From assembly GCA_020137815.1 (NCBI GenBank), contig CM035352.1:9300001-9364000 (forward strand): a stretch of DNA of 64,000 bases. The letters run 5' to 3'. Origin of the DNA: Hormiphora californensis. Taxonomy: Eukaryota > Animalia > Ctenophora. A program made the translations under genes and the position numbers. This document shows positions 31,201 through 37,200 of the stretch, piece by piece. Within the stretch, counting starts at the first letter, position 1. Every line of letters starts with the position of its first letter. The notes under the pieces were generated by a model. That model did no database searches. It had not been told where the DNA came from and worked only from the letters and a program-made list of their open reading frames with translations.

Positions 31201-34200
31201 TGTGGTGGGGTTTATCTATTGGATTGTGTATTATCAATACAATACCTGTACTCCGTGGAGACTGTTGGCTTCATAAGAGTTTGATACAATGATCTTGGAA
31301 ATCTTCCATTCTTCACTCAGTGTGATCACAAACTCAGCAGCTTCAACCTCGGCAACGTGATAACACGTGCTGAAAAGAGTGGATTATATTTTAGATAACA
31401 TGTACTGAAAAGTGTGGATTATATTTTAGATAAAACCACTTTAGTGTTATGATCACGATTGACTAACACTTACTGGGTAAACCCGTCTACTAGAACTGAT
31501 GTATCGTAGCTAAGACTCGCCTCTGGAAAGATAAGTTAGTTAATGATAACATGTGAATGATGAATCATTAATGATAATTGATATCATTAATGATAATTGA
31601 TATCATTACCCTGATAACGTACTGACACTGTAAATCACACATCACGTGGATCACATCACATACACACTAACATCACACATGTCACAGATCACACATGACG
31701 GATCACATGACACACACAAACACTCACTGGGTGAGCAGCACACATACACTAACATCACCCATATCACGTATCACATATCACACATCACACATATCACATA
31801 TCACAGATCACGGATCACATCACACACATATCACACACTAACATCACACATGTCACGGATCACATGACACACACATGACACTCACTTGGTGAGCAGCACC
31901 AGCAGTTGCCGCATTGTGTGTCCTTGCCGTCAGGGTAGTACACATGACCCGGCCTGCGATTGCATTTATCAGTTGGACTCCCCCCTGGGTTGAATTTGAG
32001 CCACCACTCCTGATCCTGATCGGTCCACTCGTGACACTGGTACTCTTGTGTTGTTGCTGTGGGGGGAGTCACAATATTATTTATATAGCATGGGTAACGG
32101 TACATGTGTGTCAATGATTCTGATTCTCTTACCGCAGTCAGGTATTGTGCAATATTCCCATCGTGGTGTGGATGATAGTCCGTTATAACACCACGCCCCT
32201 AGTAAAGGTCGCACGTCCATTTCTGGTGAAAATGGGCCCATTTACGTCCATTAATGGGCCCATTAACAACAAAATGGCCCCATTTTTACTGGATAGGCCC
32301 ATTAATGGGCCTATTTTCGCTGGCCATGGCTGAATTTCGCGCGCAAAAGAGTCAAGACAGCTGTTTCCGCGCCCCACGTATACGACGACGCCCTGTGCTA
32401 TGTAAATGATCGACCATATTCATGAGAATCGATTCCATCTTTCTCTACATTCCCAGCATTGCATCTAGACGCATTTAGACGAGTATCCACCTACTATTAT
32501 AGGAGGCAGTTATAACTGCCAGTTATAACTGCCTCATACGAGATTTTGTCTCGTTTAGAAAGGCTCTGAGTCTACTGTACAAATCCCCTATTCAATGTAC
32601 AGTGTACATTGAATAGGGGATTTGTACATTGTACACTGTACAGTAGACACAGTTAACAGTGAACTCGGGGATCTCCGGAGGATCATAAGGTATAGATCAT
32701 TAGGTACAGTCATGCAAGATGCAGTGAAACCCCAAACACAAATTCTCTGCTAGATGGTCAGGTCCTTTCAAAATCAGGAAGGTCATTATAAAGTATTAAG
32801 CCAAAAACTAATTGAAATTAGTTGGCGGGAAAGGTGACCCACTTACACCTTTTGCTACTGCCGGGTATCACCACGAACTCTCATTCTATCCCTCGGTACC
32901 TCAATCCCTTATTTTTCGAGGGTAACTTATTCCTGTTCGTTCTATCCCTCTCTCTCCTCCCTGTCTCTCTCTCTCTCTCTCTCTCTCTCTCTCTCTCTCT
33001 CTCTCTCTCTCTCTCTCTCTCTCTCTCTCTCTCTCTCTCTCTCTCTCTCTCTCTCTCTCTCTCTCTCTCTCTCTCTCACTCACTCTCTCACTCTATCACA
33101 CTCTCTTTCACTGTCTTATTCCATTATTTTCACCTCTTATAATCCCTGATCCCGGCAGCAGGCAAAGGTGTAAGTGGGTCACCTTTCCCGCCAACTAATT
33201 TCAATTAGTTTTTGGCTTAATTTAGGTCCCTTTTTGGTTTCTAATCGCAGCATGACATTATTCCATGATGCGTTATACAGTCGGACCCCGATTTAGGGAC
33301 ACCCTCGGGGGAAAGGCTCTTGCCCACTAAATCGGGGTGTCCACTAAATCGGGGTCAAATAAGGGTAATTTCCTATACCAGGGAAAAAAATCCTGTCCCT
33401 AAATCGGGGTGCCACTAAATCGGGGGCCCCTAAATCGGGGTCCGACTGTATGAGAAACGAGACGAATTTCTGTGAAAATCGTATTTTAGACGTCACAATG
33501 ACGTCATTTGACGTGATTAGTGACGTCGTAACGACGTAATTGCATCACGATATATTTTTAATTAATACCTCAAAGGAGCTTGTAAAGTTTCATTGACCAC
33601 AGTGGTCAGGAAAGGGAGTTTTTGCTCGAAAAACTTTCAATTTACTGATTTTTTCGTCAAATTTTTGACTTCCGACGCGATTTAAGGGCTCAAAATGATA
33701 AGCTACGAAAATTCGCAATTTAGTATCTGAAAGTTCAGACGATTTGCCGGTAACGATTTTTCGTCAAATCAGAAATCGGAACACGTCTTCAGGGTGCTAG
33801 AGGCGTTTGAAAAAAGTTAGTCAGTCTCGCGCAATGACGTCACTCGTGACGTCATTGCGCGCGTCATAGGTAAGATGGAGAGTCGCCACCCAGATGGGTA
33901 CATGCACGAGACAATTATCTGTCGAATGCCGCTTGGTTTAAGGTCGTACGATGTCTGGTTCGTCTCAAACTGGGACCAAACGGAAGGTAACAAAGCGTCT
34001 ATACATCTATATATATATGTATATATATATGTATCAACCTAGTTATCCCCACACTGAATTTTCTGTTTTGGGGGTGGTGTTATAACTTTTGAACAAAAAG
34101 AGCTAGCCACTTGAAATTTTTACCATCGATAGAGGTCTACAAGAAGCTTCTAAGTACAAAATTTCAGCTCCCTAGCTCTTCCGGTTCGGGAGTTATGGCA

Positions 34201-37200
34201 TGTCAAAAAGTGCCAAAATGGGCTAAAAGTATGAAATAACTATATATACGCTGTGAGCAAGCGGGCCGTTTTTGGGGTTTTTTTTTCGGGGGATGGATGG
34301 GGTCACCTTTGCGCTTGCCAGCGCAGTGATAAGGTGATTATAAGCCCCACCTCTATGTTAGACAAGGTAAACACGAAATATTTTGGTACTTGGAAAACAA
34401 ATTGACCATAGCTTTCAATTACACTGGGGTAATCTTCATCAGCGGAGTGAGTGATGGAGTGAGTGGCATGGTGTGATTCGGTGTCAGGGTGGAGATGTGA
34501 TAGGGTGGTGACTGGTGAGCTGGGGTGTTGTGGTATGATGTGAGGGGAGCCGGGGGGGGGGGGACGGGGGGAAGTGAAGAATATTTCCAAATTCAAACCG
34601 TTCCATCCCAATCAGGAACAGAAAGAATAAATGAGCAGGGAATTTCCAACGTGGGCAATAGCATTATATAAATAGCCCGTGAAAATATTGACATTCTGTG
34701 TAAAAAATTGCTACCCCCTTTCCCGTGCTGTAAACCTTCTGTGAAACATCTCACCTTCCCTTTCTAGCCTTATCGTCAATTGCTACCCCCTTTCCCGTGC
34801 TGTAAAACTTCTGTGAAACATCTCACCTTCCCTTTCTAGCCCTCTCGCCAATTGCTACCCCCTTTCCCGTGCTGTAAACCTTTTATAAAACATCTAACCT
34901 TCCCTTTCTAGCCCTCTCGCCAATTGCTACCCCCTTTCCCGTGCTGTAAACCTTCTGTGAAACACCTCACCTTCCCTTTCTAGCCCTATCGCCAATTGCT
35001 ACCCCCTTTCCCGTGCTGTAAACCTTTTGTGAAACATCTCTCCTTCCCTTTCTAGCATTTTCGCCAAGTACTACCCCCTTTCCCATGCTGTAAACCTTCT
35101 ATAAAACATCTCACCTTCCTTTTCTAGCCCTATCGCCAATTGCTACCCCCTTTCCCATGCTGTAAACCTTCTATAAAACATCTCACCTTCCCTTTCTAGC
35201 CCTATCGCCAATTGCTACCCTCTTTCCCGTGCTGTAAACCTTCTATAAAACATCTCACCTTCTCTTTCCAGCCCTATCGCCAATTGCTACCCCCTTTCCC
35301 GTACTATAAACCTTCTATAAAACATCTCACCTTCCTTTTCTAGCCCTATCGCCAATTGCTACCCCTTTCCCATGCTGTAAACCTTCTATAAAACATCTCA
35401 CCTTCCCCTTCTAGCCCTATCGCCAATTGCTACCCCTTTCCCGTGCTGTAAACCTTTTGTGAAACATCTCACCTTTCCTTTCGAGCCCTATATATTGGTA
35501 CCCGGAAGGTGAGATGAAAGGGGGTAGCAATTGGCGATAGGGCTAGAAAGGGAAGGTGAGATGTTTTATAAAAGGTTTACAGTACGGGAAAGGGGGTATC
35601 AATTGGCGATAGGGCTAGAAAGGGAAGGTGAGATGTTTCACAGAAGGTTTACAGCACGGGAAAGGGGGTAGCAATTGGCGATAGGGCTAGAAAGGGAAGG
35701 TGAGATGTTTTATAGAAGGTTTACAGCACGGGATAGGGGGTAGCAATTGGCGAGAGGGCTAGAAAGGGAATGTGAGATGTTTTATAGAAGGTTTACAGCA
35801 CGGGAAAGGGGGTATCAATTGGCGATAGGGCTAGAAAGGGAAGGTGAGATGTTTTATAGAAGGTTTACAGCACGGGAAAGGGGTAGCAATTGGCGAGAGG
35901 GCTAGAAAGGGAAGGTGAGATGTTTTATAAAAGGTTTACAGCACGAGAAAGGGGGTACCGGGTAGATATTGGCGAGAGGGCTAGAAAGGGAAGGTTAGAT
36001 GTTTTTATAAAAGGTTTACAGCACGGAAAAGGGAGTAGCAATTGGCGATAGGGCTAGAAAGGGAAGGTCAGATGTTTCACAGAAGGTTTAAAGCACGGGA
36101 AAGGGGGTAGCAATTGGCGATAGGGCTAGAAAGGGAAGGTGAGATGTTTTATAGAAGGTTTACAGCATGGGAAAGGGGGTAGCAATTGGTGAGAGGGCTA
36201 GAAAGGGAAGGTTAGATGTTTTATAAAAGGTTTACAGCACGGGAAAGGGGGTAGCAATTGGTGAAAAGGCTAGAAAGGGAAGGAGAGATGTTTCACAAAA
36301 GGTTCCTCGCATTGTGGTAACCGTTGCCGTGCATCCAACGCGACTTTCAGGCTCAGCTTTGGACGACAAATTGGCCAAAATGCGCGGCTTTACAATTGCG
36401 CGTTCTAAATGTCAGCGAAAATGGGCCCATTTATGGGCGCATTCAGCTAAAATGGGCCCATTTTGTTGTTAATGGGCCCATTAATGGACGTAAATGGGCC
36501 CATTTTCACCAGAAATGGGCGCGTGACCTTTACTAGGGGCCCCATCCAATTTATCAGGATTCCTACAGTAATTATCCAGCAATCCACTGTCAGGGTACCT
36601 ATAGGAAATTATAGTACAATGTATCGATGAAACAAATTTGAAATAATTTCAGTTGGGCTGCAGTCCACTAGTACACACGGCTACCGATAGAGGGACAGTT
36701 CGAGTAACCCTCCCTCCGGCTAGGGGGGCTGTTCGAGTACCCCCCCCCCCCGGCTAGGGGGGCTGTTCGAGTACCCCCCCCCCGGCTAGGGGGGCTGTTC
36801 CAGTACCCCCCCCCCCCGGCTAGGGGGGCTGTTCGAGTACCCCCCCCCCCCGGCTAGGGGGGCTGTTCCAGTACCCCCCCCCCCCCCCCCCGGCTAGGGG
36901 GGCTGTTCCAGTACCCCCCCCCCCCCGGCTAGGGGGGGCCTGCAGCAGCGTATGCCAATAATCCACCTACTTGGTATTACTAGTACTGTACTAGTGTACT
37001 AGGAGGACTGCACCTACTTGGTTGGTTTATATTGATGCGAGTTTGGAGTTTGATCTGCCCAAGGCTGGCACGGTATCCCACTTTTAGTAACAGACATCGT
37101 CCCCCTGTATTGCTCCGCCTTCGAATCAGAACTTTTATCATAGCATTCAATGCCCGTGTCAGAGGACTTTTTAGGCGTCGTTACGTTGCTCAGCGCTTTG

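What the first reader, a model, noticed from the sequence alone, without database searches (positions are those of the whole stretch)
32195..36540. A 4.3-kb transposon inside a kringle exon whose own TIRs supply in-frame splice sites (introner-like new intron)
Seen in sequence: removing 32197-36538 and one GC TSD restores ...CRNPD-KLDG-AWCY..., which is canonical kringle spacing, so the element landed in coding sequence. On the sense (minus) strand the upstream TIR reads CCCTA|GTAAAG|GTCACG and the downstream TIR ends CCTTTACTAG|GG. Splicing the GT at 36533 to the AG at 32199-32200 gives GAT GGG GCC CCT AGG GCG TGG TGT (DGAPRAWC, +3 aa). The second GT, 6 nt further in, gives DGAPSKGAWC (+5 aa). 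Both are in frame and fall in a kringle loop, and the flanking exon halves have no stops. The element has since gained nested MITEs and a 72-bp array, as an intron would. Because the signals lie in the TIR, they would be present in either orientation. Established knowledge: CCC termini with a 2-bp TSD fit the CMC/EnSpm group, and introners are TEs that create spliceable introns. Inference: this family may generate frame-preserving introns across the genome.
Basis: partly seen in the sequence, partly recalled or inferred. Interest (0 to 1): 0.88.

Follow-up and report, generated by a model that had tools for sequence, protein, structure and literature searches.

The report
Young transposon insertion splitting a kringle exon
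A 4.3-kb non-autonomous DNA transposon really does sit inside a kringle-domain exon of what is probably a comb-jelly gene, but other individuals and a sister species appear to lack it, so it looks like a young insertion allele, not an established intron, and its splicing is untested.

Summary
A 4,342-bp element (32197-36538) has 128-nt inverted ends (91% complementary), CCCTAGTAAAGGTC termini and a 2-bp GC target duplication. It splits the second exon of a minus-strand kringle domain, and removing it restores a canonical six-cysteine kringle.

The intron reading is not supported.
- DNA contigs from two samples, and one from a related species, follow the exon half exactly to the element boundary and then leave it. 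This fits empty alleles, so the insertion looks young and polymorphic.
- The 72-bp arrays belong to the family and were not gained later.
- The family is small, about 59 ends. All 13 complete copies have 2-bp duplications, and none of the other 12 splits a host coding frame.
- Both donors lack the +5 G that all four neighbouring introns have, and they score lower.
- The donors and the acceptor lie inside a predicted 128-bp RNA stem.
- About 10-18% of random inverted ends would offer an in-frame GT/AG pair.
- The spliced scar reads TAG in one phase of three.

No RNA data could be reached. The scan holds at least eight similar notes on other DNA of this genome. Most likely this is a segregating null or weak allele.

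The parts
32197..36538 (.). Non-autonomous TIR DNA transposon, 4,342 bp, with no long non-repetitive ORF
   Evidence: Ends found; termini; ORF list. The closest copy, L031, is 93-95% identical.
32195..32196 (.). Target-site duplication GC, left copy
   Evidence: checked.
36539..36540 (.). Target-site duplication GC, right copy
   Evidence: checked.
32197..32322 (+). Left terminal inverted repeat. It holds reiterated AAATGGGCCCATT-type motifs.
   Evidence: I23, D7, D8.
36413..36538 (-). Right terminal inverted repeat
   Evidence: I23; 22-nt period at 36450-36506.
36539..36598 (-). Upstream half of kringle exon 2 (YPDSGLLDNYCRNPDKLDG), preceded by the acceptor cctatag|G
   Evidence: Pfam Kringle profile positions 35-56.
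32133..32196 (-). Downstream half of kringle exon 2 (AWCYNGLSSTPRWEYCTIPDC), followed by the donor GCG|GTAAGA
   Evidence: Pfam Kringle profile positions 60-79.
37018..37210 (-). Kringle exon 1 (...ECYDKSSDSKAEQYRGTMSVTKSGIPCQPWADQTPNSHQYKPT-)
   Evidence: Pfam Kringle E 1e-07, profile positions 4-38; 668 kringle relatives.
31886..32068 (-). Next downstream exon (ATTQEYQCHEW...CCSP), in phase with the kringle exon
   Evidence: donor CAA|GTGAGT.
36526..36533 (-). The two candidate donors inside the right end: CTA|GTAAAG (G at 36533) and AAG|GTCACG (G at 36527)
   Evidence: They score 2.5 and 4.0, against 5.5-7.0 for four local donors. Both are base-paired in the end-to-end duplex.
32199..32200 (-). 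Candidate acceptor AG (cctttactag|GGGC) inside the left end
   Evidence: Pyrimidine share 0.53, against 0.59-0.76 for local acceptors. Base-paired in the duplex.
34706..35491 (.). 72-bp tandem array, 10.9 units
   Evidence: Also present in family copies L031 and L004.
35516..36304 (.). 72-bp tandem array in inverted orientation, 10.9 units. With the first array it forms arms about 790 nt long.
   Evidence: (I1-I22).
32801..34328 (.). Block absent from the closest family copy, L031. It holds nested MITEs at 32795-33221 (71-nt ends, (CT)80 inside) and 33275-33451.

Best explanation
This is a young insertion allele that is still segregating in the population. A non-autonomous cut-and-paste DNA transposon with a 2-bp target duplication, CCC termini and 128-nt inverted ends with subterminal repeats jumped into the second exon of a kringle domain. 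The gene encodes a large extracellular multi-domain protein and belongs to an animal that is probably the comb jelly Hormiphora californensis (an inference from assembly size, not a direct identification). The element arrived already carrying its 72-bp arrays, and probably its nested MITEs too.

On this haplotype the 122-nt exon has become a 4.46-kb exon. The most likely result is a null or strongly weakened allele. Skipping the exon shifts the frame, because 122 is not a multiple of three, and retaining the element gives early stops. A minority of transcripts may use the weak GT and AG in the ends and would then carry a 3- or 5-residue insertion in a kringle loop.

Shown: the insertion, the target duplication, the family and the restored kringle. 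Consistent with the data but not read base by base: the empty alleles. Inferred: the effect on the mRNA.
For: - Structure and restored frame.
- Empty-site signals. X5 contig record 10 (511 nt, 1 difference in 314) and X1 record 1 (331 nt, 10 differences in 213) align from the downstream exon up to 32199. They then run on for 178 and 118 nt that do not match the element. The break at 32199 is what an empty allele predicts, since GGGGC is shared and the next base is T instead of A.
- The 110-nt contig of organism B aligns to 32121-32196 at 87% and then leaves the element too.
- The X1 contig and organism B share the same three variants at 32163, 32164 and 32167. X5 carries the window's alleles there but no element. 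This suggests the element entered an already derived haplotype.
- The species is reported as 3.2% heterozygous (PMC8527503), provided my identification is right.
- Family behaviour is that of an ordinary transposon: about 59 ends, a matching 2-bp duplication in 13 of 13 complete copies with no target preference, and none of the 12 other copies in a host coding frame.
- The arrays are shared with L031 and L004.
- The splice signals are weak and base-paired.
Against: - The unaligned parts of the contigs could not be read, so the empty site is inferred from break positions and lengths only.
- The tables cannot show whether any run holds the filled junction, so zygosity and allele frequency are unknown.
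- No RNA data were reachable, so efficient splicing is not excluded.
- GTAAAG-type donors and TAG acceptors are used in many animals, and two of the four neighbouring acceptors here are TAG.
- The closest genomic copy is only 93-95% identical, so no very recent donor copy is visible.
Confidence: 0.68

Rival explanations
1. An intron being born. The element is removed from the pre-mRNA through the GT at 36533 (or 36527) and the AG at 32200-32199, both supplied by the identical ends. The product is a working protein with 3 or 5 extra residues in a kringle loop, so the allele is nearly neutral and can persist.
For: - The sites exist, and the arithmetic (9 or 15 nt) holds in either orientation because the terminal 14 nt are identical at both ends.
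- The insertion lies in a loop between kringle profile positions 56 and 60.
- TAG acceptors are used by neighbouring introns.
- There is a known precedent. Maize dSpm has splice sites at its termini that create a novel intron in the A2 gene (Menssen et al. 1990; only the title was seen, in the reference list of PMC4219821).
Against: - The donors score 2.5 and 4.0 against 5.5-7.0 for local donors and lack the +5 G present in all four.
- The donors and the acceptor lie in a predicted duplex of -225 kcal/mol.
- A chance in-frame pair is expected for 10-18% of random ends.
- There is no RNA evidence. The only candidate RNA run has no contig of this gene.
- Because the insertion is young and polymorphic, the intact exon halves are uninformative.
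Confidence: 0.2
2. A dedicated introner family. This transposon family is adapted to create frame-preserving introns and has seeded introns in many genes.
For: The terminal 12-14 nt are conserved in intact copies of both subfamilies. The scan's first readers flagged several other 'transposon in an exon' cases in this genome, but these are unchecked notes and none was shown to belong to this family.
Against: - The family has only about 59 ends, roughly 30 elements, mostly 2.7-8.6 kb long.
- None of the 12 other complete copies splits a host coding frame. One sits in a retroelement ORF.
- The scar CCCTAGG gives an in-frame TAG in one of the three insertion phases (read directly from the sequence).
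- A look-up of the ends among the scan's earlier notes found nothing.
Confidence: 0.03
3. An assembly artefact or a somatic event. On this reading the element is not in the germline at this site.
For: No independent run was shown to hold the filled junction, and no second copy of the exon region exists in the assembly.
Against: The termini are exact and the 2-bp duplication matches the rule seen in 12 other copies. A mis-join would not reproduce that. The tables cannot exclude the filled junction either.
Confidence: 0.04

Closest known systems
Maize dSpm (En/Spm, CACTA) in the a2-m1 allele, where splice sites at the element termini create a novel intron (Menssen et al. 1990, EMBO J 9:3051; title seen, details from my own knowledge)
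   Same: Both are non-autonomous elements with a short target duplication, C-rich termini and subterminal repeats, lying in coding sequence. In both, GT and AG inside the termini would remove almost the whole element and leave a short in-frame scar.
   Different: In maize the splicing and a working protein were shown experimentally. Here there is no RNA evidence. The maize duplication is 3 bp and this one is 2 bp. The termini differ (CACTA there, CCCTA here). No transposase links this family to CACTA/CMC.
Introners of Micromonas, Aureococcus and many other eukaryotes (Huff et al. 2016, from my own knowledge; Gozashti et al. 2022 and 2025, PMC9860276 and PMC12130899; review PMC11282704)
   Same: A DNA transposon with inverted ends and a target duplication whose ends, together with the duplication, could supply both splice sites.
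   Different: Introners are defined by many similar copies that are spliced introns in unrelated genes, and they are usually short. This family has about 30 mostly multi-kilobase copies, only one of which lies in a host exon, and that one is polymorphic. 'Ctenophor' does not occur in PMC12130899, and the only paper holding both 'introner' and 'ctenophore' was not read.
Splicing of Tc1 out of mutant pre-mRNAs in C. elegans (Rushforth and Anderson 1996) and of Ds and Mu elements in maize (reviews by Wessler and Purugganan); all from my own knowledge
   Same: An exonic insertion of a DNA transposon can be partly removed through cryptic sites in or near its ends, giving a leaky allele.
   Different: Those cases use heterogeneous cryptic sites and are usually imprecise. 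They are described as mutant alleles, not as new introns. That is also the most likely status here.
CMC superfamily (CACTA / Mirage / Chapaev; Yuan and Wessler 2011, from my own knowledge)
   Same: A 2-bp target duplication, termini starting with CCC, long ends and reiterated subterminal motifs.
   Different: The defining transposase was not found in any copy examined, so membership remains open. ISL2EU-type elements are also listed with 2-bp duplications (my own knowledge).

Membership tests
Introner elements | Many similar copies that make up introns of unrelated protein-coding genes | tested here: not met
   The family has about 59 ends. None of the 12 other complete copies splits a host coding frame.
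Introner elements | Precise removal from mRNA by the spliceosome | not testable with these tools
   No RNA holder was listed. The one candidate RNA run has no contig of the gene.
Introner elements | Splice sites supplied by the element ends and/or the target duplication | tested here: inconclusive
   GT and AG are present and in frame. However, the donors are weak, all sites are base-paired in the end-to-end duplex, and such a pair is expected by chance in 10-18% of random ends.
Introner elements | The insertion is tolerated or fixed in the gene as an established intron | tested here: not met
   Contigs from two samples and a related species break at the element boundary as empty sites would.
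CMC (CACTA/Mirage/Chapaev) DNA transposons | Target-site duplication of 2-3 bp | tested here: met
   All 13 complete copies have a matching 2-bp duplication of varied sequence.
CMC (CACTA/Mirage/Chapaev) DNA transposons | Termini beginning CAC or CCC, with inverted ends | tested here: met
   CCCTAGTAAAGGTC at 47 ends; 128-nt inverted ends.
CMC (CACTA/Mirage/Chapaev) DNA transposons | CMC-type DDE transposase in autonomous copies | tested here: inconclusive
   No transposase-like ORF was seen in the 17 loci whose ORFs were listed, and the five element ORFs scanned had no Pfam hit. The PF02992 search of the assembly was blank, but the control genomes were silent too.
Kringle domain (PF00051) | A module of about 80 residues with six conserved cysteines and the NYCRNPD...WCY core | tested here: met
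   Three exon pieces match profile positions 4-38 (E 1e-07), 35-56 and 60-79. Each piece alone is below the gathering score. The restored reading has all six cysteines. There are 668 relatives at E<=0.001.

The most novel reading that the evidence does not exclude
The identical ends of this family act as a built-in, orientation-independent splice cassette (CCCTA|GTAAAG ... CTTTACTAG|GG). Exonic insertions would then be spliced out leaving a 9-nt scar. The kringle allele would be an intron caught at birth in a comb jelly, one of several such cases the scan flagged in this genome.
Probability: 0.15. Interest if true: 0.7.

Novelty: new member of a known kind. Interest (0 to 1): 0.3.

Why it matters
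If the allele were spliced as proposed, it would be a dated, polymorphic example of intron birth from a transposon in an early-branching animal. RNA and long-read data from the very individual that carries it are reported to be public, so it could be tested directly. As things stand it is a clean example of something ordinary: a heterozygous exon-disrupting transposon insertion captured by a haploid assembly of a highly heterozygous species. It also carries a practical warning. The intact flanking frames and in-frame GT/AG pairs are expected for any young exonic insertion and do not by themselves indicate an intron. It also documents an undescribed transposon family with 2-bp target duplications.

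Tried and rejected
Only the left junction could be laid, so no joint across the element could be seen and the loose ends at 32199 were not printed.
- A protein search with the ORF that runs from the element into the exon found no candidate.
- The representative search with kringle exon 1 returned only generic multi-kringle proteins of at most 54% identity. It found no protein from this organism that would show the allele.
- A 26-nt empty-site pattern was absent from the metagenome contigs.
- The assembly holds no second haplotype copy of the exon region.
- The transposase hunt failed. There were no long non-repetitive ORFs in the loci whose ORFs were listed and no Pfam hits on the element ORFs scanned. 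PF02992 was blank with silent controls. The Atlas search of an ORF shared by two copies was uninformative.
- Menssen et al. 1990 is not held in the library.
- Rejected: that the 72-bp arrays mark ageing as an intron.
- Rejected: that the absence of stops in the exon halves argues for splicing. The insertion is too young for decay.
- Rejected: that the scar is always harmless. It reads TAG in one phase of three.
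Full report
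**Observation**

On the minus strand the window reads ...AATCCTGATAAATTGGATGGGGC | CCCTAGTAAAGGTC... at 36539/36538, and ...GACCTTTACTAGGG | GCGTGGTGTTAT... at 32197/32196. The repeat finder reports the two arms 32195-32322 and 36413-36540 as a 128-nt inverted repeat, 91% complementary (I23). The element proper is 32197-36538 (4,342 bp), flanked by GC on both sides.

Joining 36598-36539 to 32194-32133 in a local script gives YPDSGLLDNYCRNPDKLDGAWCYNGLSSTPRWEYCTIPDC. The two splice proposals give DGAPRAWC and DGAPSKGAWC, both in frame.

The exon upstream (37210-37018) supplies the first half of the domain and joins in phase. Pfam Kringle matches the three pieces at profile positions 4-38 (E 1e-07), 35-56 and 60-79. 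The same exon finds 668 kringle relatives in the representative library. So the element split an otherwise complete six-cysteine kringle in the loop before the WCY motif.

**The spliced model and the search tools**

The exon pieces were searched separately by reference. The joined translation was computed only locally. One short 26-nt empty-site DNA pattern was typed for a metagenome scan.

**The host genome**

The assembly has 110,691,255 bases in 45 contigs, and all family hits fall on C1-C13 plus one small contig. The published Hormiphora californensis assembly is 110 Mb in 44 scaffolds, 13 of them chromosome-sized, with 3.2% heterozygosity (PMC8527503). An earlier follow-up in this scan also speaks of a comb-jelly gene. 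I take the organism to be this ctenophore, but that is an inference from size and scaffold number, not a direct identification.

**The transposon family**

- The 14-nt terminus occurs 47 times, against 0 for the reversed control. A conserved inner motif of the ends occurs 59 times. That makes roughly 30 elements.
- There are two subfamilies of ends. Intact copies begin exactly at CCCTAG, and older ones are degraded or truncated.
- All 13 complete copies (eleven of 2.7-8.6 kb, one 331-bp MITE form and the window copy) have a matching 2-bp target duplication. The duplicated sequences vary: TC, AG, GG, CG, CC, TA, TA, AA, TT, CA, CA, CA and GC.
- The window copy's closest relative, L031 on another chromosome, is 93-95% identical. 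It carries the same 72-bp arrays, as does L004. Subfamily-2 copies carry about 2.5 units next to one end. The arrays are therefore part of the element and were not gained after insertion.
- Relative to L031 the window copy has an extra 1.5-kb block (32801-34328). This block contains two MITEs with their own inverted ends.
- No transposase-like ORF was seen in the 17 loci whose ORFs were listed, and the element ORFs scanned had no Pfam hit. A PF02992 search of the assembly was blank, but its controls were silent as well.
- The 2-bp duplication, the CCC ends and the reiterated subterminal motifs (D8) fit CMC-type elements. Membership is unproven.

**Age and polymorphism**

- In X5, a different sample and study of the same organism label, the only contig over the exon half (record 10, 511 nt, 1 difference in 314) aligns from 31886 to 32199. 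It then continues for 178 nt that do not match the element.
- In X1, record 1 (331 nt, 10 differences in 213) does the same, with 118 further nt.
- An empty allele predicts exactly this break. GGGGC is shared by the two junctions and the next base differs (T against A at 32200). The 178 nt would end about where the G-rich 34-bp intron array begins, a natural end for a de Bruijn contig.
- A 110-nt contig of organism B aligns to 32121-32196 at 87% and then also leaves the element.
- The X1 contig and organism B share the same three variants at 32163, 32164 and 32167. X5 has the window's alleles there but no element. This suggests the element entered an already derived haplotype.
- The unaligned letters were not printed, so the empty site is inferred and was not read directly. 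The tables cannot show whether any run holds the filled junction.
- The assembly has no second copy of the exon region.

**Could it be spliced?**

- The sites exist, and because the terminal 14 nt are identical at both ends they would be present in either orientation. The scar would be 5 + 2 + 2 = 9 nt, or 15 nt with the second donor.
- The four neighbouring introns have the donors ATG|GTAAGT, CAA|GTAGGT, GCG|GTAAGA and CAA|GTGAGT. All have G at +5 and score 5.5-7.0 on a simple U1-complementarity scale with a maximum of 8. The element's donors, CTA|GTAAAG and AAG|GTCACG, score 2.5 and 4.0 and lack the +5 G. This is a crude measure based on four introns.
- The acceptor has a pyrimidine share of 0.53, against 0.59-0.76 locally, although TAG acceptors are in use here.
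- In the pre-mRNA the two ends are predicted to pair with about -225 kcal/mol, with both donors and the acceptor inside the stem. The donor is transcribed 4.3 kb before its partner, so this does not exclude recognition.
- An in-frame GT/AG pair within the first 12-16 nt of a random inverted end occurs in 10-18% of simulations.
- The scar CCCTAGG reads TAG in one of the three insertion phases, so the ends are not a universally safe cassette.
- Skipping the restored 122-nt exon would shift the frame.

**RNA evidence**

None could be obtained.

- No listed holder is on record as RNA.
- The one candidate RNA run has a single contig, which touches a 42-nt repeat piece.
- The protein searches found no product from this organism covering the site.
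- The metagenome scan for the empty site was blank.

**Family-level claim**

For the 12 other complete copies, the restored insertion sites show no host reading frame through the junction beyond what random positions in the window give. The window's null has a median of 78 codons and a 90th percentile of 182. The exception is L039, which sits in a 194-codon retroelement-like ORF. Some copies lie near Sushi- or ShK-like exons, probably in introns.

**The scan's own notes**

The scan's first readers flagged at least eight other 'transposon in an exon, introner-like' cases on other DNA of this genome. One was followed up with the same verdict as mine. None could be tied to this family. These are unchecked leads. 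Taken together they fit a haploid assembly of a very heterozygous animal carrying many young insertions at least as well as they fit a special splicing tolerance.

**Comparison with known systems**

- By mechanism, the nearest precedent is maize dSpm, whose termini contain splice sites that make a novel intron in A2. I saw only the title, cited in PMC4219821. The paper itself is not held, so the details come from my own knowledge.
- Introners (PMC9860276, PMC12130899, PMC11282704) share the principle. Their defining features were not met here: many copies serving as introns of unrelated genes, and demonstrated splicing.

**Verdict**

The intron-birth reading is unproven, and several of its supports fall away. 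The best explanation is a young, segregating exon-disrupting insertion of a small non-autonomous family with 2-bp target duplications. The allele is probably null or leaky. The decisive data, RNA and long reads from the assembled individual, exist publicly according to the genome paper but could not be reached here.

Noticed in passing
window 34706-35491 and 35516-36304: Two 72-bp tandem arrays of 10.9 units each lie head to head, forming inverted arms of about 790 nt at 92-95% complementarity inside the element. The closest family copy, L031, has the arrays in both orientations. This gives the family a fold-back-like interior.
   Followed up: partly
window 32795-33221: A 427-bp MITE with 71-nt ends (96%) and a (CT)80 microsatellite inside. 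The summed contig depth there is 100-1000 times that of the flanks in both organism A and organism B runs, so this is a very high-copy element shared by the two species.
   Followed up: partly
window 36698-36937: A 34-bp tandem array, seven units, rich in G/C homopolymer runs (unit GTTCGAGTACCCCCCCCCCCCGGCTAGGGGGGCT). It fills most of the intron between the two kringle exons.
   Followed up: no
window 29339-30940 (minus strand): A 534-codon stop-free stretch made of tandem LETNNDNDLVGSRS-type units, lying just downstream of the kringle gene's exons. It is unclear whether this is a coding repeat or a satellite that happens to be open.
   Followed up: no
window 54001-60000: GC content drops to 0.29 and GC skew is strongly positive (+0.41 to +0.46) over about 6 kb. 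This looks like a strand-biased satellite or low-complexity block.
   Followed up: no
window 30995-31192, 37304-37465, 38136-38468 (minus strand): Exons ending in ...CEVMVYGE, ...SEVEVYGK and ...CEIRVYGE, plus a weak F5/8 type C hit at 20966-21151 and a Sushi hit at 27853-28278. The kringle appears to sit in a large mosaic extracellular protein with discoidin- or fucolectin-like repeats.
   Followed up: partly
L039 (G000:C10:6697347-6703806): A family copy inserted into a 194-codon ORF of a retroelement-like sequence. This is the only other complete copy that interrupts a long open frame.
   Followed up: partly
L036:2210-3196 and L039:2790-3230: Two family copies share an internal ORF of up to 329 codons (HTVLCDLTDMESENES...). 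It has no Pfam hit and no informative Atlas neighbour. It may be a captured or nested sequence.
   Followed up: partly
window 32163-32167: Three variants (G>T, T>C, T>G) are shared by the second haplotype in run X1 and by organism B. The window haplotype therefore carries the derived state in the kringle exon.
   Followed up: no
same genome, other windows (scan notes): At least eight first-reader notes describe other transposons inside coding exons with spliceable ends. A genome-wide check against the RNA data would show whether this reflects heterozygous insertion load or real splicing tolerance.
   Followed up: no
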